The notes below the pieces were generated by a model. The model had not been told where the DNA came from. It searched no databases and saw only the letters and a program-made list of their open reading frames with translations. From Mantamonas sphyraenae STR306 (Eukaryota > Protista > CRuMs), in contig JAPMXV010000023.1 in NCBI GenBank assembly GCA_026936335.1, positions 148,737 through 212,736 on the forward strand: 64,000 nucleotides of DNA. Reading direction: 5' to 3'. Below are positions 34,242 through 42,000 of the stretch, piece by piece. Numbering within the stretch: position 1 is the first letter of the stretch; each line of letters opens with the position of its first letter. The position numbers and the translations under genes are program-made.

Positions 34242-35789
34242 ATGATGGCTGTGGAGGAGAGTCTGTTGCATGCCAAGCGGCATGGCAAGTATCTGATGCT
34301 GCGTAGACTGTGCATGTACGAGAAGGAGAAGGAGAAGGAAATGGGACAGGAAGAGGTCAGAAAAGTGGCCAAGGCAAAGGTGCAGGCGTACCTTCAGCTG
34401 CGCTCGCTTCTGCTGTCGCACAAACGGCACATGATTGAGCAGAACCTATCGCGTAGCAGCGTCGTGGCCAAAATGGCCGAGAGTGCAGACGGGTAGGTGG
34501 CTTTGTGTGCTGGAGCCGGAACGAAAGCTGGGACGGCGGGCTTTTGCGGCTGGAAACGCTGACGCACAGGGATGTGGTGATGGGCGGTGTGGCGTGTGGG
34601 GACACACAGACGAGCATGGACAAATATTGACGAGGTGTCGGACCGGGCGTCGTCTGTGTCGCACTCGTCGTTCTACGAGGACGGCGACGTGATGCCGCTG
34701 GAGCCGAGCGACATTGACGCGCAGCTGGTCAAGGCAAAGAGCAAGAAGCAGGCGGAGACACTGGAGGAGGCGTATGCATTCCGAGGGATGCATCACATCT
34801 TTACACACGCAAAGGACGCAGTGACGTGCGTGCAGTTTGGCAACGAAGATCGGGATCTTCTTGCGTTTGGCAGTCTGGACGGAACGATCACGGTGGCGAC
34901 GGCCATGTACTCGCCAGGCATTGCCACCATCCTGGCTGGCCACAGGAAGGGGGTCACCGACATACAATGGAGCAGCGGGAACGACTATCTCCTGAGCAGC
35001 AGCAAAGACGGAACGCTGCGTTTGTGGACGCCATCGCCGGGCAAATGTGTACGTACGATTGAGGACGGGAAGCAGGCTGTGAACTGTTGTTGCTTCCATC
35101 CGCTGAACGCAAACATGATTGTGTCTGGAAACGAGCGAGGCCAGCTGCGGTCATACAATTTCAGCACGGGCCTGCAGCTGGACAAGACGAGCTACACAGG
35201 AGCCATCACAGCGCTGCGCTTCTCCATGACAGCGTACGGGGCGATTTTGTTTGTGGGCACGAGTAAGGGCAAGATGGGCGCATACACGGTGGACCTGCAG
35301 TCGGGCTCATTCAGCAAGGTGTTTCGCATGTCGGTGGGAGGAAAGGACGACCATGTGACGAGCATTGCGTACAACAACTACCTGGGCACGCAAGCACACC
35401 CATTGCTGCTGGTGAACATTAGCGGGAGCAACGCAGTGCACGTGTTTGAGTTGACAAGCAGCAGCCGAGGCAACGTGGAGGCGCAGGTGCTTCGCACGTA
35501 TGGCATCCAGCACAGGCATCATGGTTTGCGCTCTGTGTTTTGCCCTTTAATCCCATTCAACCGCAAGGGGGCATGTGTTGTCAGTGGCTCTGAGGACGCG
35601 ACTATTTATGTGTACGACATCACGGACACGCGCGGCGGCGGGTTGGTCAACACACTGTTGGGCCACAACGGGCCCGTGTTGGCCGTTCACTGGAACTACG
35701 ACGAGTCGCTGCTGGTCTCTGCCGATTTGGCAGGCACGGTGATTTTGTGGAAGCGGATGGACTTTCAGATCGCAGAGCGGATTTTGTGA
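34242..35789 (+). CDS. WDR13: WD-repeat protein 13; exons 34242-34492, 34610-35789
   Basis: YLQLRSLLL N-terminal motif, YAFRGMHHIF...AVTCVQFGNED...GSLDG, RSVFCPLI...GACVVSGSED, WNYDESLLVSAD...VILWKR. Confidence 0.88.
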
Positions 35790-35854
35790 GGCGGGTTCAT
35801 CTTCATTCGCGAAAACACTTTGTACAGCGTGTGTTGGCACATCCAATCTCCTGT

Positions 35855-37603
35855 CTACGCCGTGCTGGTGGAGCTGTTGCTGTTGATGAGGCGCGAAATA
35901 CCTGTGCCGACGCCCGAGGCGGCAAGGGTGATCATGCTCTTGATAAAGGCGTCGTTGACCTCAAAACCAAGGACTTTGAAGTTCATGCGCACGCCGCGGA
36001 GGACAATGATGAGGTTGTTGAGCATGTTTGCGACCTCGCGGGAGTACTGGCGCTGCTGGATGGACAGTTGCGGGTTGACAACCTCGAGGTTGGCGTCCCA
36101 CTGGCGGTCGCTGATGACCATCTCATGACCCTTGAGGAGACGGTTGATTTCAGCGCCGACGAGGATGGTGCGGATGAGGAAGGAACTGAGGACAGCGGCG
36201 TCGTAGATCAGCTTTTGCACAAAGAGGGAGTTGATGGCGAGGCCCGAGGTGGGAAACACAAGGCCGAGAATCATAAAGACAAGGATGCCAATGTCGGCGA
36301 GGAGGACAAAGGAAAGAATGACCTCTTGCCAGCGCAGCTCGACGATTTTGTAGGCAAGAAAGAACTTGCGGATGCGCATCCAGGCGCTGATGTTGCGGAG
36401 GTTGAGGAGGTTGAGGAACGGGATGGAGTCCTTGGTGCAGTACTCGATGGAGGAGCAGTGGGAAAACAGGAGGATGCGGTTGCGGCGTGCGAGAAAGAGC
36501 ATCTCGGAGCGCAGCACGACAAAGAGGAGCATAAAGAAGAGGAGGTAGTCGAGGAGGATGGAGCCGAGCATGATGAACTGGAAGAGCGGATCTTCAGTGC
36601 CGAGGAAGCTGCCGCCGCGGGCGATGCGAGTGATGGGAATCATGAGGGCGTGAGGAAGAGCCCAGAAGAGACTCTTGTAGATTTGCGTGCGCTTTGCGTC
36701 TTGGATCATGTCGAGGGCACGGTCATTGATATGCTCGACAATGTCGCGGCATGTGTCGATGCCAGGTGTGCTGTCGACCTCGACGTCGCCGAGATCTTCG
36801 AGCTCACGTTCTCCGACGCCCTGCTCGTCTTCGGAGGCGAGCATGGTGGCACAGATGATGCTGACCATGAGATAGATGGTGAGTGGGGCGTATACCTGGA
36901 CGGTGGCGGAGCCGTCGAGGGTGGAGGCAGTGGTGTCGCTGAGAGCAAAGATGAGAGGGACGACGATGAGGATGAGGTAGGATGGGAGCATGAGGAAGAG
37001 CCAGGCGAGGGCGGCGACAAGTCGGTTGGAGCGGATGGTGCGTGTGATGTCGGGACCAGTCATGGCGTAGAAGAACATCTTGACAGGCTGGAGGCGGTTG
37101 AAGTAGCGGCTGAGAGGGAGGGTGAAGGGCAGAAAGAGAAATGCGGCGAGAAAGACGCCAAACTCGGTGGGGGAAAAGGTGACACGTTCCTTCTTGTTGA
37201 CCCAGTTGCGCATGCGAATGATGTTTTCAGGGTGGAAGAGAAGCTGCATGTTTTCCCAGAGCTCGCCAGTTTCCTCGTCGCCCGAGGCGAGGATGCGCAT
37301 AAGGTTGACAAACTCGTCCTCTTCGATGGTGTTGTCGTGGTCCTGGTCGGCTGTGGCAAAGATGCGCACGAGCTGCTCGTTGCTCATTTCGATGCCAAGG
37401 AATGCGACGACGTTTGCGAGGTCGTCGAGGTCGATTTCGCCCGTGCCGTTTGCGTCAAAGAGGTGAAAGGCCTCGCGGACATCGTCTTCTTTCTCTTGGG
37501 AAAAGTGAAAGGTGCTGTGAGCGGAGGAGAGGAGGTCGACGCCAGCCTCTTTGCTTTGGCGGAGCTGGTTTGCGCGGAGCCGCAGCTTGGAGCTGGCAGA
37601 CAT
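35855..37603 (-). CDS. EF-hand pair fused to a PHTF-like seven-transmembrane domain; probably extends upstream into the 37765-38913 ORF
   Basis: EF loops DANGTGEIDLDD and DQDHDNTIEEDE. About 7-8 hydrophobic helices. PHTF-like segments IPFLNL...NISAWMRIRKFF, FLIRTILVGAEIN and FKVLGFEVN...SGVGTGIS. Confidence 0.75.
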   Translation of the reverse strand: MSASSKLRLRANQLRQSKEAGVDLLSSAHSTFHFSQEKEDDVREAFHLFDANGTGEIDLDDLANVVAFLGIEMSNEQLVRIFATADQDHDNTIEEDEFVNLMRILASGDEETGELWENMQLLFHPENIIRMRNWVNKKERVTFSPTEFGVFLAAFLFLPFTLPLSRYFNRLQPVKMFFYAMTGPDITRTIRSNRLVAALAWLFLMLPSYLILIVVPLIFALSDTTASTLDGSATVQVYAPLTIYLMVSIICATMLASEDEQGVGERELEDLGDVEVDSTPGIDTCRDIVEHINDRALDMIQDAKRTQIYKSLFWALPHALMIPITRIARGGSFLGTEDPLFQFIMLGSILLDYLLFFMLLFVVLRSEMLFLARRNRILLFSHCSSIEYCTKDSIPFLNLLNLRNISAWMRIRKFFLAYKIVELRWQEVILSFVLLADIGILVFMILGLVFPTSGLAINSLFVQKLIYDAAVLSSFLIRTILVGAEINRLLKGHEMVISDRQWDANLEVVNPQLSIQQRQYSREVANMLNNLIIVLRGVRMNFKVLGFEVNDAFIKSMITLAASGVGTGISRLINSNSSTSTA

Positions 37604-37764
37604 GACGGGGAACAGGGAGTGGGACTGCTTCTTGGAGATGGAAGGGGGATGGGGCGGAGCGGAGTGGAGTTGCAGAGGCGGACTGAGGCGTGTGGGGAGC
37701 GTGGCACCCGGGGTGATGTGTGCGTGGGCCTCGGAAAAGGTGAGGCTTGCGTTGTGGGACGGGA

Positions 37765-38913
37765 TCATGGTGCTCTCGAGGGGCGAGCGGTCGCGAGGAG
37801 AGGTCGGGGCACGTCGCAGCTTGGCGTGTGCTGAGCTGAGGTGAGTTGGGAACTGGATGGCATGGTGTTGGGGATGATGTGGGGCTGCGGCTGTGGAGAT
37901 GGGCTGCGGGACGGGGACGGGGAGCGTTCACGGGGCTCGGGTAGTTGGACAACGCGGATCTTGTCGCGAGAGACGAGCTTCTGGGAGGCACCCTTGCGCC
38001 ATTGGATGAGATAGAGGTCACGGTCAACGTCGTAGCTGAGGATGATACAATCGCGCCATTTGGTCTTGCCCGAGTTGGAGGTGTAGGGGCTCTTGGCAAG
38101 GGTGTCACGAGGAAGTGGATGGATGTCTTGATAGCGTGTGTCGTGGGAGCGTGCGGCGGCGTCGAGGTTGCGAGCTCGGGAGGCGGCGGCAGCGGCTGGC
38201 GGAAGCGTGGACCTTTGGGAGAGGCGTTTGTTGGAGGCAGAGCGAGAGGTGGAGTTGCTGTTCTGTACAGGGGAGGCGCCGGCGAGGGACTTGCGGATGG
38301 GACCGGCAGAGCGGCGTGGAGGACCGCCGGTGGTGTTGCTGCGGAGGGGCGGCATGGAGTTGCGTTGACCCGGCTGTGCGTCGGAGAGCGTGGCATGTGC
38401 GCGAAAGTCGGCTGAGGAGTGTCGATTGGCGTGCGTGGTTGTGCGGGAGAGTGGGCCGTTTGGAGAATCGCGAGAGCGTTGAGGGCCGGAACGACGCGGT
38501 GGACGACGGTCGGAGGGTTGGGTGTCGTCGACATCATCGTCATCCTCGTCCTCTTCATCCGCCTGGTCGTCGTCGACGTAGTTGTGGTAGTCGTCGCCGT
38601 CGTAGTCGTAGTCTTGTGTGGCCCGGGTTTCGGGTGTCCGTTGGCGAACGTTGTGTGCGCGCGGGGCGGCCATCATGGCACGTTCGGCATTGTGAAGCTG
38701 CTCGGCGTCGTACTCTGAGTAGGGATCGTCGTCCTGGGAGGGCTGTGTGAGGATGTCGTTCTGCTCTGCGTCGTCGTCGTCGTCGTCGTAGTCGTCGTCG
38801 TCTTCTCCCCGTTGCAGCTGAGGCTCGCTAACGGCATGGTGTGTTCGCGAGAGCTGGGGTGAGTCTAGCGAAGAGCCACGGTGGGGTTGAATGGGCCGGA
38901 GCTTTCGGTGCAT
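37765..38913 (-). CDS. Disordered acidic/Ser-Arg region with a small Tudor/SH3-like barrel; likely N-terminal part of the EF-hand/PHTF gene
   Basis: KWRDCIILSYDVDRDLYLIQWRKGASQKLVSRDKIRVV. Its stop overlaps the ATG of the downstream frame (ATGA at 37768-37765), and the downstream frame is open from about 37927. Confidence 0.55.
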   Translation of the reverse strand: MHRKLRPIQPHRGSSLDSPQLSRTHHAVSEPQLQRGEDDDDYDDDDDDAEQNDILTQPSQDDDPYSEYDAEQLHNAERAMMAAPRAHNVRQRTPETRATQDYDYDGDDYHNYVDDDQADEEDEDDDDVDDTQPSDRRPPRRSGPQRSRDSPNGPLSRTTTHANRHSSADFRAHATLSDAQPGQRNSMPPLRSNTTGGPPRRSAGPIRKSLAGASPVQNSNSTSRSASNKRLSQRSTLPPAAAAASRARNLDAAARSHDTRYQDIHPLPRDTLAKSPYTSNSGKTKWRDCIILSYDVDRDLYLIQWRKGASQKLVSRDKIRVVQLPEPRERSPSPSRSPSPQPQPHIIPNTMPSSSQLTSAQHTPSCDVPRPLLATARPSRAP

Positions 38914-39072
38914 GGATGGTAGGGTGAGGGTTGGGTGGGTGCGGGCAAGACGGACGCGTGGGCTGGGCGTCGGGCCAGCCAACGAGACGCAGGAGCAGGT
39001 GAGTGGAAGCGGTCGTGCTGAGGTGGAGAGGATCCAGGGGGCGCTGACACAGACACACAGCTGGCAGCAGGG

Positions 39073-42000
39073 ATGTGGGTCAAGAAGCTTCGGGAACAGT
39101 GGACGAAAGAGCAATCACGAAGCAGTCTGCAGATCAAAGAGACGCTGCAGGACGATGAGGCAGAGGAGGAGCCGAAGAAGGAGAAGGAAGAAGAGGAAGT
39201 GAGAAAGAAAGACGCCGATGTGGATGGCGGTGCTAAGGAAGGCGCAGAGAGCACGGGCGAGGAGACGACGGCAGAGAAGGAGGATGAGGTTGCGCTGCGA
39301 GAAGCGATGCTCTCTAGCTTTGTGGGCAAGGCATTGGGCATCCTGGACATGGACGACGTGGCCGAGTGGGTGCGGAAGGAGCGTGACGGGATGTAAGTGT
39401 CGGAGCGGGTTGGAGGGTGCAGGACGGGGAGTGGGCACAGCAGAGGAGGCAGAGGGAAAGGGTGGCGGCTGGAGAGAGGGCTGACGTTGTTGGGGTTGCA
39501 CGTGGCGGGACTGTGGACACAGGATCATGGCACAAGTGGACGACAAGGACAGTACATTGGAGTGGCGAGCGACAGACGAGGAACTGGAAGGGATGGAGAC
39601 TCAGCTTGCGTATTGGCTGCGAGAGAACGGATTGACGGTGGAGGATGTTCGTGGCGACGAAGATGCCGGAGAGAAGAGGCCAACGCTTCCTGACAGGTTG
39701 CGCCGCATGAAGTGGAAGAAAAAGGATGCGCGTGAGCTGCGCCGTGCATACGGGGAGGATGTCGGGGAGGAGGAAGAGGAGGAGGAGGAAGAAGAAGAAG
39801 AAGAGAAGAGGAAGAGGAGGAAGAGGAGGAGGATGAGGAGGAAGTGGAAGAGGGTGTCGAACAGTTGCTGAGTCCGATCCAAACACAGCCTGTGTTCAAG
39901 ATGGGCCGTTCGGGAAGTCTGGTGCAGCGGTCGACGAGTTTGAAGCGGTCGGGCCAAAACATCCAGGTGGCGATCCTGGATCTGGCGAAGAAGCAAGAAG
40001 CAGAGGGAAAGGGTGGAGAGGAGACAGATGCAGCTCGATCGAGCTCGGGGCTGCTGGCGAGGCCGAAATTAAGCCCTGCGCAGAAGCGGGCAAGCGGGTC
40101 GCATCGTTTGGGCCGTGCGCTTTCGTCGCTGGCTAGCAGAGGGGTGCTTTTCAAGCTAGACGGAGACGAGAGCTCGCTGCGAGTAGGGAGGACAGGACGT
40201 GCGAGGATGGAGTCGTCGATGGGCCACGTGGAGGAAATCGAGTTTAGCGGTGAATTGGGGTCGTCGATCGAGCAGTTTAAGGCTGCGGGAGAAGGCGCAG
40301 AGAAGGAAGGGACAGAGGGTGCGGCAGGAGAGAAGCCGGGGTGGCTGAGCGAGCTGTCGTCGATGTGGGATCAGGCGTATGACGAGCAGCACACGGAGGA
40401 GGGCGGGAAAGGCAAAGAGAGGCAAGCGGCGTTGGAGCGTGTGGAGGAAGAGGGGGCGGAGGAGGAAGAAGAGGAAGAGGGAGGCGCGGGTGTGGAGGAG
40501 GAGGAGGAGGAAGCGACGCCACAGAGGCAAGAGTCGCGTGCGAAGCGAACGATGCGCTCGTTGACGACAGGCGGGTACGGCAAGGGCACGACGAGCAAGA
40601 GGAGACTGCGAACGATGACAATGGGCAACCTGTTTGCACGCGGGCGAGGAGACAGTGAAGAGGAGGGAAGCGGGTTGACGACGGTGACAAAGGGCAAGGC
40701 GCTGAGCAAGTCGCGAATTGAGCGGTATCTGTTTAAGCTGCGGAACCACGTGCGGCGTCGGCGCAAGGTGCAAAATAGCCTGGGGAAGGAGTATCGACAG
40801 CTGACAAAGGCGTACTCTGAGGAGTATGCAATGCTGGGGCGTATGGGTCTGCTTGAGCTGCGGAAACGATACAAGGAGCTTGCGCGGCTGCAATGCAGTG
40901 TGATCAACACGCGGATGGAGGCAGAGACTCTGTATGTGGATGCACTGAACAAGAAACGTGCAGAGCTGGAGGAGATCGTGCGTGGAGGGGTAGAGGCGTG
41001 GGTGGACAAGGTGGTTGCGGAGCGGCGAGAGGTGCTGGGGGAGGAGGGCGGCGTTGTGGAGGCGCCCACGATGGAAGAGGTGTGTCCAGGGTATGTGGAG
41101 GTGGCCAAGCAGGGTGGAGAGTGGGAGGATGCGATGCGACGTGCGGAGGGAACGCAGGTGCGAGTTGAGCAGCTGGAAAGGGAGTATGCGGCGATCCGGA
41201 AGAGACTGCCACAAACGACGGAAGCAGAAATGCAGGGCCTGGTGAAGGATGCATTGGGGCGGGTGAGCGCACACAACGACAAGATCGGATTCCACGAGTA
41301 CGTGGACGAGGACCAGGACTTTTTCGACAGTCTGATGATGGACCAGCGGATGGCAATCAACACGCGGATGGAAAAGTTTGTGGTGCTGGTGAACGGGACG
41401 ACGGAGCGGCTGGACCCGAGGGATGTGGTGGAGTTTGTGCAGGACTTTTGCCGGCGGATGATGGAGACGTACGCGCTGGATGAGGAGGCGGAAGGGAGCA
41501 AGCTGGAGCTGTTTGTGAAGCGGTATGTGTTTCCGCTGGTGCAAGGATACACGTGGTCACTGGAGCGATGGATGAGTGCGGCCGAGGTGGAGGAGACACT
41601 GAGGCGGGACGAGGCGTACCGGGATGCGTGCAAGCGATTCCATGGGAAGGAACCCGGGTTCTTTGGGGTAGAATCTGTGTATGTGGGGGAAAGCGGGCAG
41701 GAGGCGTATGCAGATGCAGTGGAAGTGCTCGGGGAGCTGGACTGGGAAACGGTGCCGACGGACATGCTGTACACACTTCTCAAGGTGTTTTCGATGTTGC
41801 ACGCGGAAGCCAAAGGACACGCAAACGCAGTGGGGGAGGCTGAGGAGGGACTTGGGGCGGACGATATGCTGCCGATTGTGGTGTATGTGTGCGTGCGTGC
41901 GGCGAACCTGTACATGTTCTCAAATTTGGAGTTTATGCAGGCGTACGCGACTCCCGAGGAGCAGTATTCTGAGCTGGGGTATGTGGTGACGAGCGTGTAT

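What the first reader, a model, noticed from the sequence alone, without database searches (positions are those of the whole stretch)
35855..37603. EF-hand-fused PHTF/7TM ion channel: a candidate Ca2+-regulated member of the insect odorant/gustatory receptor superfamily
Seen: two EF loops (DANGTGEIDLDD, DQDHDNTIEEDE) in a centrin/calmodulin-like lobe (VREAFHLFD...). They are followed by a short hydrophobic segment and seven helices ending in FKVLGFEVNDAFIKSMITLAASGVGTGISRLI. Known: the C-terminal half aligns by eye with animal PHTF1/2 (LPHFRL..VQNIKMWLSLRSYL; FLLRL..LGSETN; PFRLYGLTMN...SAVSGVISDLL). PHTF has been assigned structurally to the 7TM ion channel (Or/Gr-like) superfamily, which has a cytosolic N-terminus. 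Inference: the EF-hands would be cytosolic and could gate or desensitise a tetrameric channel through Ca2+. I do not know this architecture from characterised Or/Gr/PHTF proteins.
Basis: partly seen in the sequence, partly recalled or inferred. Interest (0 to 1): 0.82.

Follow-up and report, generated by a model that had tools for sequence, protein, structure and literature searches.

The report
EF-hand-fused PHTF-like seven-helix membrane protein
A marine flagellate gene joins a calcium-binding EF-hand pair to a membrane domain that is related to animal PHTF proteins and folds like insect smell and taste receptor channels, which gives a testable clue (calcium control) to a protein family whose function is unknown.

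Summary
One uninterrupted minus-strand ORF (35855-37603, 582 aa) encodes a canonical EF-hand pair (Pfam E 4e-13; both loops fit the PROSITE pattern), then a short hydrophobic hairpin and seven helices.

- **PHTF homology:** a profile of this protein and six paralogs from the same genome hits PF12129-bearing PHTF proteins at E 1e-14 to 1e-18. HHalign gives 98.8% over TM3-TM7.
- **Topology:** K+R counts (27 inside, 1 outside) and the model put the EF-hands in the cytosol.
- **Family placement:** the protein lies outside the canonical PHTF clade. It has no PHTF1-2_N domain and its first intracellular loop is 48 aa. I file it as a PHTF-like "Class-B" 7TMIC.
- **Organism:** assembly statistics match Mantamonas sphyraenae.
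- **Distribution:** the same fusion occurs in a second paralog (already noted by the scan on another contig), Diphylleia, Chrysophaeum and a MMETSP transcript, and more weakly in Chlamydomonas. Other relatives carry cNMP-binding, C2 or Kelch domains.

The held papers on 7TMICs and PHTF that I searched do not mention EF-hands or calcium. Channel activity, tetramer formation, Ca2+ gating and the 5' end of the gene remain untested.

The parts
35855..37603 (-). Minimal coding sequence (582 aa plus TAG) of the EF-hand / PHTF-like 7TM protein
   Evidence: Uninterrupted ORF. Codon-usage score is positive in this frame throughout.
37283..37498 (-). EF-hand pair, one calmodulin/centrin-like lobe (residues 36-107)
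37421..37456 (-). EF loop 1 (residues 50-61); Asp rather than Glu at loop position 12
   Evidence: Matches the PROSITE EF-hand pattern; coordinates checked.
37313..37348 (-). EF loop 2 (residues 86-97); fully canonical, Glu at position 12
   Evidence: Matches the PROSITE EF-hand pattern; coordinates checked.
37196..37276 (-). Two amphipathic linker helices (residues 110-136) between the EF lobe and the membrane part
   Evidence: Helices 110-122 and 125-136 in the model, pLDDT 60-67. Some EF-hand structures align through residue 131-138.
37109..37171 (-). First hydrophobic segment (residues 145-165) with the family's conserved FLP motif; read as a re-entrant helix-kink-helix, not a membrane span
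   Evidence: Two short helices, 145-156 and 158-165, pLDDT above 90. Five K/R on each flank. The motif is shared with PHTF and with EF-bearing relatives. The segment lies inside the structural match to PHTF.
37028..37099 (-). S0-like intracellular helix (residues 169-192)
   Evidence: Structural alignments to Orco/Gr/Or begin at model residues 175-177, opposite the first resolved residues of those chains. BmGr9 has an N-terminal intracellular S0 helix (PMC11100771).
35861..37024 (-). Seven-helix 7TMIC core (residues 194-581): TM1 194-221, TM2 231-256, acidic IL1 257-304, TM3 305-328, TM4 339-382, TM5 420-449, TM6 459-509, TM7a 515-537, TM7b 551-581
36353..36400 (-). Conserved cytosolic helix before TM5 (residues 402-417), holding the nearly invariant W408 and R412
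   Evidence: W408 and R412 are conserved in at least 90% of 150 aligned family members. They align with an invariant W and R of PHTF.
35954..35983 (-). Short hairpin with the invariant Leu-Gly (L545, G546) at the TM7a/TM7b break
   Evidence: Invariant in all 7 paralogs. Strand-turn-strand in the model. Aligns with the PHTF Ser-Gly-Leu motif.
37604..37927 (-). Possible 5' extension: same frame open, alternative ATG at 37766-37768, Pro/Ser-rich
   Evidence: Open frame of 690 aa. Codon score is +0.25 for 37768-37604 and +0.17 for 37927-37769 in this frame, against -0.06 for the upstream ORF's frame. Suggestive only.
37765..38913 (-). Upstream ORF (382 aa from its ATG), acidic and disordered with a small Tudor-like segment; its TGA overlaps the ATG at 37768. 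Either a separate gene or the N-terminal part of this gene, split by a frame change
   Evidence: No Pfam family and no similarity to the N-termini of any homolog.

Best explanation
Shown.
- The gene encodes one polypeptide. An N-terminal calmodulin-like EF-hand pair with two canonical loops is tethered, through two amphipathic helices and a short hydrophobic hairpin, to a seven-helix domain.
- That domain is homologous to animal PHTF proteins over TM3-TM7.
- It has the fold of insect odorant and gustatory receptor channels (7TMIC): split TM7, and long cytosolic extensions of TM4-TM6.
- It belongs to a family of at least seven paralogs in this genome, most likely Mantamonas sphyraenae. It lies outside the canonical PHTF clade, so it is a PHTF-like 'Class-B' 7TMIC.

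Inferred.
- The N-terminus is cytosolic, so the EF lobe senses cytosolic Ca2+.
- On binding Ca2+ the lobe changes its grip on the adjacent amphipathic helices (110-136). These are fixed to the re-entrant segment and the S0-like helix at the base of the helical bundle.
- This shifts the 7TM domain between active and inactive states.
- The 7TM domain most likely works as a tetrameric cation channel, like its only characterised relatives. The protein would then be a Ca2+-activated or Ca2+-desensitised channel.

My odds: architecture and fold above 0.9; cytosolic EF-hands about 0.85; real Ca2+ binding about 0.7; ion channel about 0.4.
For: - Single ORF.
- PHTF homology: the paralog profile finds 682 proteins at E<=1e-3, and 9 of 10 hits of 720-930 aa that I tested carry PF12129. 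HHalign gives 98.8%, E 8e-17.
- Topology: K+R 27 inside against 1 outside, with 5 K/R on each side of the first hydrophobic segment. There is no signal peptide ahead of a 144-residue folded N-terminus. In the model the bridge residues 142-143 can pair only with elements on the cytosolic face.
- Recurrent fusion: EF-hands also occur in paralog L011, Diphylleia rotans P0005, Chrysophaeum taylorii P0085, a MMETSP transcript and metagenomic proteins, all collinear.
- Other cytosolic sensor domains sit at the same position in relatives: cNMP-binding in P0008 and C2 in P0021.
Against: - No PHTF or PHTF-like protein has a demonstrated function. Rat PHTF1 sits in the endoplasmic reticulum and binds FEM1B (PMC9998090), which does not point to a channel.
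- The tetramer prediction gave no verdict.
- Loop 1 has Asp at position 12 and Thr at position 5, which may lower Ca2+ affinity (my own knowledge of EF-hands).
- The position of the EF lobe relative to the membrane domain is modelled with only moderate confidence (pLDDT 60-84). I could not inspect coordinates.
- EF-bearing members are scattered on a poorly resolved tree (8 changes), so the fusion is not a stable trait of one clade. The window protein's closest paralog, L010, has no EF-hand.
- No RNA data were available.
Confidence: 0.45

Rival explanations
1. Ca2+-dependent membrane scaffold, not a channel. PHTF-like proteins anchor cytosolic partners, for example ubiquitin-ligase components, to an internal membrane. 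The N-terminal domain is the recruiting module, and here the EF lobe makes recruitment Ca2+-dependent.
For: [quoted passage not shown] Six of 97 relatives carry N-terminal Kelch propellers, which are typical substrate adaptors. One has a weak ubiquitin-like match. No conductance has been shown for any PHTF.
Against: The full 7TMIC channel architecture is kept at high model confidence: split TM7, anchor-type helix extensions, and an invariant Leu-Gly at the TM7 break. cNMP-binding, C2 and EF-hand fusions are typical of regulated channels. The two readings are not exclusive.
Confidence: 0.25
2. The EF-hands are luminal or extracellular. The first hydrophobic segment (145-165) spans the membrane as a signal anchor, so the EF lobe would sense store or external Ca2+, as the STIM EF-hand does.
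For: The segment has 17-19 consecutive hydrophobic residues and passes a simple hydropathy threshold. One relative gave a faint match to the STIM1 EF-hand family (E 8e-4).
Against: Five K/R on each flank. A 144-residue folded, signal-less N-terminus. The segment is broken at Pro157 into helices of 12 and 8 residues. The following S0-like helix aligns with the intracellular S0 of Or/Gr. The homologous FLP motif of PHTF lies near residue 80, inside the roughly 100-residue N-terminal region that precedes the seven TM helices in the published PHTF topology (PMC9998090). All other domains fused at this position (Kelch, cNMP, C2, MORN in trypanosomes) are cytosolic types.
Confidence: 0.07
3. The EF pair is a structural or degenerate module with no regulatory Ca2+ switch. 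It may be permanently Ca2+- or Mg2+-loaded, or act as a dimerisation or packing domain.
For: Loop 1 has Asp at position 12. Several relatives keep only one canonical loop (P0005, P0041, the Chlamydomonas protein). The closest paralog, L010, manages without an EF-hand.
Against: Both loops of this protein fit the PROSITE pattern, and loop 2 is fully canonical. The second EF-bearing paralog, L011, keeps three canonical loops.
Confidence: 0.1
4. Gene-model rival, compatible with any of the functions above. The real protein is about 900 aa. The upstream acidic, Tudor-like ORF (38913-37765) and the EF-hand/7TM ORF are one gene, split in the assembly by a one-base indel near 37860-37930. Alternatively the protein simply starts at the ATG at 37768.
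For: Codon-usage score passes from the upstream frame to the EF frame near 37860-37920 with no non-coding dip. The EF frame is open from 37927. The last 50 or so codons of the upstream ORF score like non-coding sequence. There are six C4 runs in the overlap. Paralogs carry N-terminal extensions of 500-850 aa in the same ORF.
Against: The assembly was polished with Illumina reads (PMC10492846), and the paralogs' long ORFs are intact. C-rich low-complexity DNA can look coding in several frames. No homolog has a similar N-terminus. An intron is unlikely: there is no GTRAG donor or CTRAC branch motif in 38300-37500, whereas an intron I read in a ribosomal protein gene of this genome has a GTGAGT donor and a CTGAC branch motif, and a second has the CTGAC motif before its acceptor.
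Confidence: 0.3

Closest known systems
Animal PHTF1/PHTF2 and Drosophila Phtf (PF12129-bearing 'putative homeodomain transcription factor' proteins)
   Same: Sequence homology over TM3-TM7 (HHalign 98.8%, E 8e-17; hmmsearch E 1e-14 to 1e-18). Shared FLP motif before TM1, the W/R helix before TM5, and the Gly-containing break before TM7b. Best structural match among predicted models (TM 0.63).
   Different: No PHTF1-2_N domain (no Pfam hit at E<=1). Only a weak 19-column match in TM2. The first intracellular loop is 48 aa instead of more than 300. The protein lies outside the 99%-supported PHTF clade. It carries an EF-hand pair, which none of the 26 PF12129 proteins examined has.
Insect odorant and gustatory receptor channels (Orco 6C70, MhOr5 7LIC, BmGr9 8VC1, Gr43a 8JM9)
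   Different: 7-12% identity. No match to 7tm_6, 7tm_7 or DUF3537 profiles. An extra N-terminal EF-hand pair, linker and hydrophobic hairpin. The insect proteins are gated by external ligands; nothing is known here.
Trypanosomatid GRL1 (MORN-repeat plus 7TMIC fusion, Benton & Himmel 2023, PMC9998090)
   Same: A 7TMIC fold with a cytosolic domain fused to its N-terminus. That paper calls it the first example of such a fusion.
   Different: A different fused domain (MORN against EF-hand) and a different 7TMIC branch. The trypanosome proteins have homologs only within trypanosomes, whereas this family is PHTF-like and widespread.
Uncharacterised proteins with the same architecture: Chrysophaeum taylorii KAJ8604370.1, a Diphylleia rotans transcript (EukProt P032183), a MMETSP transcript, Chlamydomonas reinhardtii CHLRE_09g401550v5
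   Same: An N-terminal EF-hand or EF-hands, a linker, the FLP hydrophobic segment, then a PHTF-like 7TM domain, all collinear.
   Different: Only 20-27% identity. Several keep one canonical loop. The Chlamydomonas protein has one PROSITE-type loop but no Pfam EF-hand at E<=0.01. None is described in the papers searched.
Channels with built-in cytosolic EF-hands, such as plant TPC1 (from my own knowledge, not tested here)
   Same: A cytosolic EF-hand pair in the same polypeptide as a cation channel couples Ca2+ to gating. This is the working analogy for the proposed mechanism.
   Different: Unrelated fold (voltage-gated-like 6TM repeats), and the EF-hands sit in an internal linker rather than at the N-terminus.

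Membership tests
7TMIC superfamily (insect Or/Gr fold) | Seven transmembrane helices with the N-terminus inside and the C-terminus outside | tested here: met
   Seven long helices after residue 194. K+R 27 in the predicted cytosolic loops against 1 in the outer loops.
7TMIC superfamily (insect Or/Gr fold) | TM7 split into a cytosolic 7a and a pore-lining 7b | tested here: met
   Helices 515-537 and 551-581, separated by a hairpin with an invariant Leu-Gly.
7TMIC superfamily (insect Or/Gr fold) | Cytosolic extensions of TM4, TM5, TM6 and TM7a (anchor domain) | tested here: met
   Helices 339-382 (44 residues), 402-417 plus 420-449, and 459-509 (51 residues), all at pLDDT above 90. They are aligned to the Or/Gr chains over their whole length.
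7TMIC superfamily (insect Or/Gr fold) | Homotetramer with a central pore | tested here: inconclusive
   Four copies of residues 339-582 gave score 0.00, 'no answer'. The alignment was not used.
7TMIC superfamily (insect Or/Gr fold) | Ion channel activity | not testable with these tools
   Needs electrophysiology or flux assays.
PHTF family proper (PF12129 proteins) | Sequence homology of the C-terminal TM3-TM7 region | tested here: met
   HHalign 98.8%, E 8e-17, 269 columns. PF12129 proteins are hit at E 1e-14 to 1e-18.
PHTF family proper (PF12129 proteins) | PHTF1-2_N domain at the N-terminus | tested here: not met
   No PF12129 hit at E<=1. Only a 19-column local match in TM2 (probability 34%).
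PHTF family proper (PF12129 proteins) | [quoted passage not shown] | tested here: not met
   The loop is residues 257-304, 48 aa, and acidic.
PHTF family proper (PF12129 proteins) | Placement inside the PHTF clade | tested here: not met
   The 26 PF12129 proteins form one clade (SH-aLRT 99). The window protein lies outside it, sister to paralog L010 (95) in an unresolved protist assemblage (quick search, midpoint root).
Class-B / PHTF-like eukaryotic 7TMICs (Himmel, Moi & Benton 2023 preprint) | 7TMIC fold plus sequence-detectable similarity to PHTF, in diverse eukaryotes | tested here: met
   The class is described in 10.1101/2023.08.30.555482. The long first intracellular loop that the preprint describes for the class is absent here.
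EF-hand Ca2+-binding domain | Paired helix-loop-helix motifs above Pfam cut-offs, with canonical 12-residue loops | tested here: met
   EF-hand_7 at 50 bits (cut-off 30). Both loops fit PROSITE PS00018 as written from memory into a regular expression. The paired short strands at 56-58 and 92-94 are present in the model.
EF-hand Ca2+-binding domain | Actual Ca2+ binding and a Ca2+-induced conformational change | not testable with these tools
   Needs calorimetry, 45Ca overlay or NMR on residues 30-140.

The most novel reading that the evidence does not exclude
PHTF-like 7TMICs as a class are channels gated from the cytosolic side by second messengers. The EF-hand, C2 and cNMP-binding fusions found in protists would then show the ancestral mode of control of the superfamily that later gave rise to externally gated insect smell and taste receptors. 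Animal PHTF1/2 would be internal-membrane channels regulated through their long N-terminal region and first loop.
Probability: 0.15. Interest if true: 0.85.

Novelty: new variant of a known kind. Interest (0 to 1): 0.6.

Why it matters
PHTF proteins are conserved from protists to humans, yet no function is known for any of them. They were linked to insect chemoreceptor channels only in 2023, and only by predicted structure.

A natural fusion of the PHTF-like domain to a Ca2+ sensor is a direct functional hint. It recurs in distant eukaryotes, and in other relatives the same position holds cyclic-nucleotide-binding, C2 or Kelch domains. That pattern suggests which stimulus to apply in a patch-clamp or flux experiment, and on which side of the membrane. 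It also points to candidate tractable test cases: this compact single-ORF gene, and an apparently related Chlamydomonas gene.

The fusion also adds a second kind of cytosolic domain fused to the 7TMIC fold, after the MORN fusion of trypanosomes.

Tried and rejected
- **Word-indexed protein search.** The whole protein returned nothing. The candidate list overflowed, so this is uninformative. The exhaustive profile search found 682 relatives.
- **Sequence search of PDB chains with the paralog profile.** Only chance hits (E>=0.5).
- **RNA evidence.** No RNA run was listed for 35700-39300 (none was listed, which is not the same as none exists). Read laying could therefore not be used.
- **Exact-sequence look-up of the 637-aa and 582-aa products.** Nothing on record.
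- **Tetramer prediction.** Four copies of residues 339-582 gave 'no answer'. This is evidence neither for nor against binding.
- **Intron joining the upstream ORF to this ORF.** There are 79 GT..AG pairs with the right phase, but none has a GTRAG donor or a CTRAC branch motif. An intron read in a ribosomal protein gene of this genome shows GTGAGT and CTGAC, and a second shows CTGAC before its acceptor. Rejected as unlikely.
- **Similarity of the upstream ORF to N-termini of homologs.** None found.
- **Kinetoplastid origin.** I first guessed this from the GC content and long ORFs. I dropped it when the assembly size, contig number and GC matched Mantamonas sphyraenae and the paralogs' nearest relatives proved to be Mantamonas plastica transcripts.
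- **Regular-expression hunt for cNMP domains.** Found nothing. Pfam scans later located the domain in P0008.
Full report
**1. The observation**

On the minus strand an ORF runs from an ATG at 37601-37603 to a TAG at 35855-35857. It is 582 codons long with no internal stop.

Pfam finds an EF-hand pair at E 3.9e-13 (50 bits, cut-off 30). EF-hand_1 and EF-hand_6 are also above their cut-offs. Loop 2 is fully canonical. Loop 1 has Thr at position 5 and Asp at position 12.

No Pfam family matches the membrane part at E<=1. That includes 7tm_6, 7tm_7, DUF3537 and PHTF1-2_N. A hydropathy scan and the predicted structure show a 21-residue hydrophobic segment (145-165) followed by seven long helices. 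The description in the finding is accurate.

**2. Organism and gene family**

The window is contig 23 of a 25,061,354-base assembly in 78 contigs, with about 59% GC. The published Mantamonas sphyraenae assembly has 25.06 Mb, 78 contigs and 59.19% GC, and its genes are 'mostly mono-exonic' (PMC10492846).

The nearest database relatives of two paralogs are Mantamonas plastica transcripts, at 53% and 62% identity. I take the organism to be M. sphyraenae, a marine gliding flagellate of the CRuMs group. This is an inference from matching statistics.

The genome holds at least six further paralogs of the membrane domain. Their N-terminal regions range from about 100 to 850 residues.

One of them, on contig 18 (locus L011, 1225-aa open frame), also carries EF-hands, with three canonical loops. 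This is probably the protein that the scan noted earlier on another piece of this genome (s1-586050).

**3. Homology to PHTF**

A profile of the seven paralogs, searched against 1.84 billion representative proteins, found 682 proteins at E<=1e-3 and 220 at E<=1e-10. Nine of the ten hits of 720-930 aa that I tested carry PF12129 (PHTF1-2_N), so they are true PHTF proteins. They match the profile at E 1e-14 to 1e-18 over its C-terminal half.

A profile-profile comparison of the paralogs with nine such PHTFs gives probability 98.8%, E 8e-17, over 269 columns from TM3 to TM7.
- the helix before TM5, with its nearly invariant Trp and Arg (W408 and R412 here);
- the Asn-containing motif after TM6;
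- the Gly-containing break before the last helix.

The N-terminal half gives only a weak local match in TM2. The FLP motif of the first hydrophobic segment is, however, shared with the PHTF consensus.

**4. Fold**

An AlphaFold2 model was built on a 150-row alignment. It has mean pLDDT 85.5 and pTM 0.80, with most of the membrane domain above 90.

- **Foldseek against the PDB.** Among membrane proteins it returns only insect gustatory and odorant receptors. The best is Gr43a 8jm9_A: E 3.4e-3, target-normalised TM 0.54.
- **Predicted structures.** The nearest is an arthropod PHTF cluster: TM 0.63, 413 residues, rmsd 3.7, covering model residues 121-575.

The model shows the defining 7TMIC traits. 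TM7 is split (515-537 and 551-581), and TM4, TM5 and TM6 have long cytosolic extensions. A language-model feature search had already placed plant DUF3537 proteins among the look-alikes.

**5. Which side are the EF-hands on?**

7TMICs have an intracellular N-terminus and an intracellular S0 helix (PMC9998090; PMC11100771). Here the structural alignments begin at residues 175-177, opposite the first resolved residues of the receptor chains. Helix 169-192 therefore corresponds to S0.

The loops predicted to be cytosolic hold 27 Lys+Arg, against 1 in the outer loops. Each flank of the hydrophobic segment 145-165 holds 5.

That segment is broken at a proline into helices of 12 and 8 residues. In the model, the bridge residues just before it (142-143) can pair only with elements at the cytosolic face (257-258, 275/284 or 543-548).

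The N-terminus has no signal peptide ahead of 144 residues. The other domains fused at this position in relatives are all of cytosolic types. I conclude, with about 85% confidence, that the segment is a re-entrant hairpin and that the EF lobe is cytosolic. I could not inspect coordinates, so this remains indirect.

**6. How common is the fusion?**

Among the 97 best relatives with at least 60 residues ahead of the membrane domain, the Pfam counts were:

| N-terminal domain | Relatives |
|---|---|
| PHTF1-2_N | 26 |
| Kelch propellers | 6 |
| EF-hands | 5 |
| Cyclic-nucleotide-binding | 1 |
| C2 | 1 |

The cyclic-nucleotide-binding domain is in P0008 (E 2e-18) and the C2 domain is in P0021 (E 1e-12).

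EF-bearing members come from several sources:
- Diphylleia rotans (another CRuMs member);
- the stramenopile Chrysophaeum taylorii (KAJ8604370.1, which UniRef calls an EF-hand domain-containing protein);
- a MMETSP transcript;
- metagenomes;
- more weakly, Colponema and the cryptophyte Hanusia.

A Chlamydomonas reinhardtii protein (CHLRE_09g401550v5) has a full PHTF-like domain (E 1e-27 to the profile) and one PROSITE-type loop. It has no Pfam EF-hand at E<=0.01.

The order EF pair, linker, FLP segment, TM1 is collinear in these proteins.

On a quick maximum-likelihood tree of the C-terminal 269 columns, the PF12129 proteins form one clade (SH-aLRT 99). The window protein lies outside it, next to paralog L010 (95). 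EF-bearing rows are scattered (at least 8 changes), but the backbone is unresolved and many rows are fragments. The number of independent gains is therefore unknown.

**7. What is known**

PHTF proteins were assigned to the 7TMIC fold by Benton & Himmel (PMC9998090). PHTF-like 'Class-B' 7TMICs of diverse protists were catalogued by Himmel, Moi & Benton (10.1101/2023.08.30.555482).

Neither text contains 'EF-hand' or 'calcium'. The first describes the MORN fusion of trypanosomes as the first fusion of this fold with a cytosolic domain. Full-text searches for PHTF or 7TMIC together with EF-hand returned only gene lists. Nothing mentions the Chlamydomonas gene.

The kind of protein is therefore known, and this domain architecture is not described in the papers I could search. 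I rate it a new variant of a known kind.

**8. Mechanism**

Shown: the architecture, the homology, the fold and the probable topology.

Inferred:
- Ca2+ binding to the lobe alters its interaction with the amphipathic helices 110-136.
- Those helices are fixed to the re-entrant segment and the S0-like helix, so the change is passed to the 7TM bundle.
- By analogy with insect receptors, the bundle would form a tetrameric cation channel.

The main rival is a non-channel scaffold that recruits partners in a Ca2+-dependent way. It is supported by the PHTF1-FEM1B interaction and by the Kelch fusions. The tetramer test gave no verdict.

**9. The 5' end**

The EF frame stays open upstream to 37927, with an ATG at 37768 that overlaps the TGA of an upstream 382-aa ORF (38913-37765).

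The codon-usage score passes from the upstream frame to the EF frame near 37860-37920 without a non-coding dip. In the EF frame it is +0.25 for 37768-37604 and +0.17 for 37927-37769. In the upstream frame it is -0.06.

This fits either a start at 37768 or a single longer gene split by a one-base indel. There are six C4 runs in the overlap. An intron is unlikely. No homolog has a similar N-terminus and no RNA run was listed. I leave this open, at about 30% for the fused model.

**10. Verdict**

The finding is real and correctly read. It is a moderately interesting new architecture within a known but functionally dark family, with a clear experimental path.

Noticed in passing
window 34587-35789 (+) and 35855-35857 (-): A WD40 propeller gene (400-aa ORF, Pfam WD40 E 3e-29) converges on the EF-hand/7TM gene. 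The two stop codons are only 65 bases apart, so the 3' untranslated regions must be very short or must overlap.
   Followed up: partly
window 37765-38913 (-): Upstream ORF of 382 aa: very acidic Asp/Tyr-rich stretches, a Ser/Arg/Pro-rich disordered middle, and a short Tudor- or SH3-like segment near its end. It has no Pfam family. Its TGA overlaps the next frame's ATG in the sequence ATGA.
   Followed up: partly
window 35747-37834 (+): A 695-aa ORF lies antisense to the gene and is rich in Asp/Glu/Gly/Val. It looks like a mirror ORF produced by the strong codon bias of the real gene, not a gene.
   Followed up: no
L009:4624-8589 (-) = G000 contig 57: This paralog has an N-terminal extension of about 850 aa with poly-Gln runs. 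A motif of roughly 20 residues (acidic run, then Gly-Gly-Phe-Leu, basic, Pro-Ala-Asn-His) is repeated three times. Its membrane domain is 53% identical to a Mantamonas plastica transcript.
   Followed up: no
L012:4516-7317 (-) and L013:5348-8341 (-), G000 contigs 17 and 33: Two sister paralogs (SH-aLRT 99) share an N-terminal region of about 500 aa that looks helical-repeat plus a small beta-grasp-like segment and a coiled coil. No Pfam family was found.
   Followed up: no
proteins P0015, P0019, P0020, P0049, P0090, P0119 (public databases): A group of PHTF-like proteins carries N-terminal Kelch beta-propellers. On the tree they cluster beside the canonical PHTF clade, together with Anaeramoeba proteins that NCBI annotates as 'homeodomain transcription factor phtf'.
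   Followed up: partly
proteins P0008 and P0021 (public databases): Single relatives carry a cyclic-nucleotide-binding domain (E 2e-18) or a C2 domain (E 1e-12) ahead of a full PHTF-like membrane domain. I did not check whether these are correct gene calls.
   Followed up: partly
G000 contig 23: 133633-134178 (+) and 141916-142461 (-); locus L018: Two ribosomal protein L1/L10A-family matches with identical scores lie in inverted orientation about 8 kb apart, just upstream of the window. The L018 copy shows an intron of roughly 145 nt with a GTGAGT donor, a CTGAC branch motif and a CAG acceptor.
   Followed up: partly
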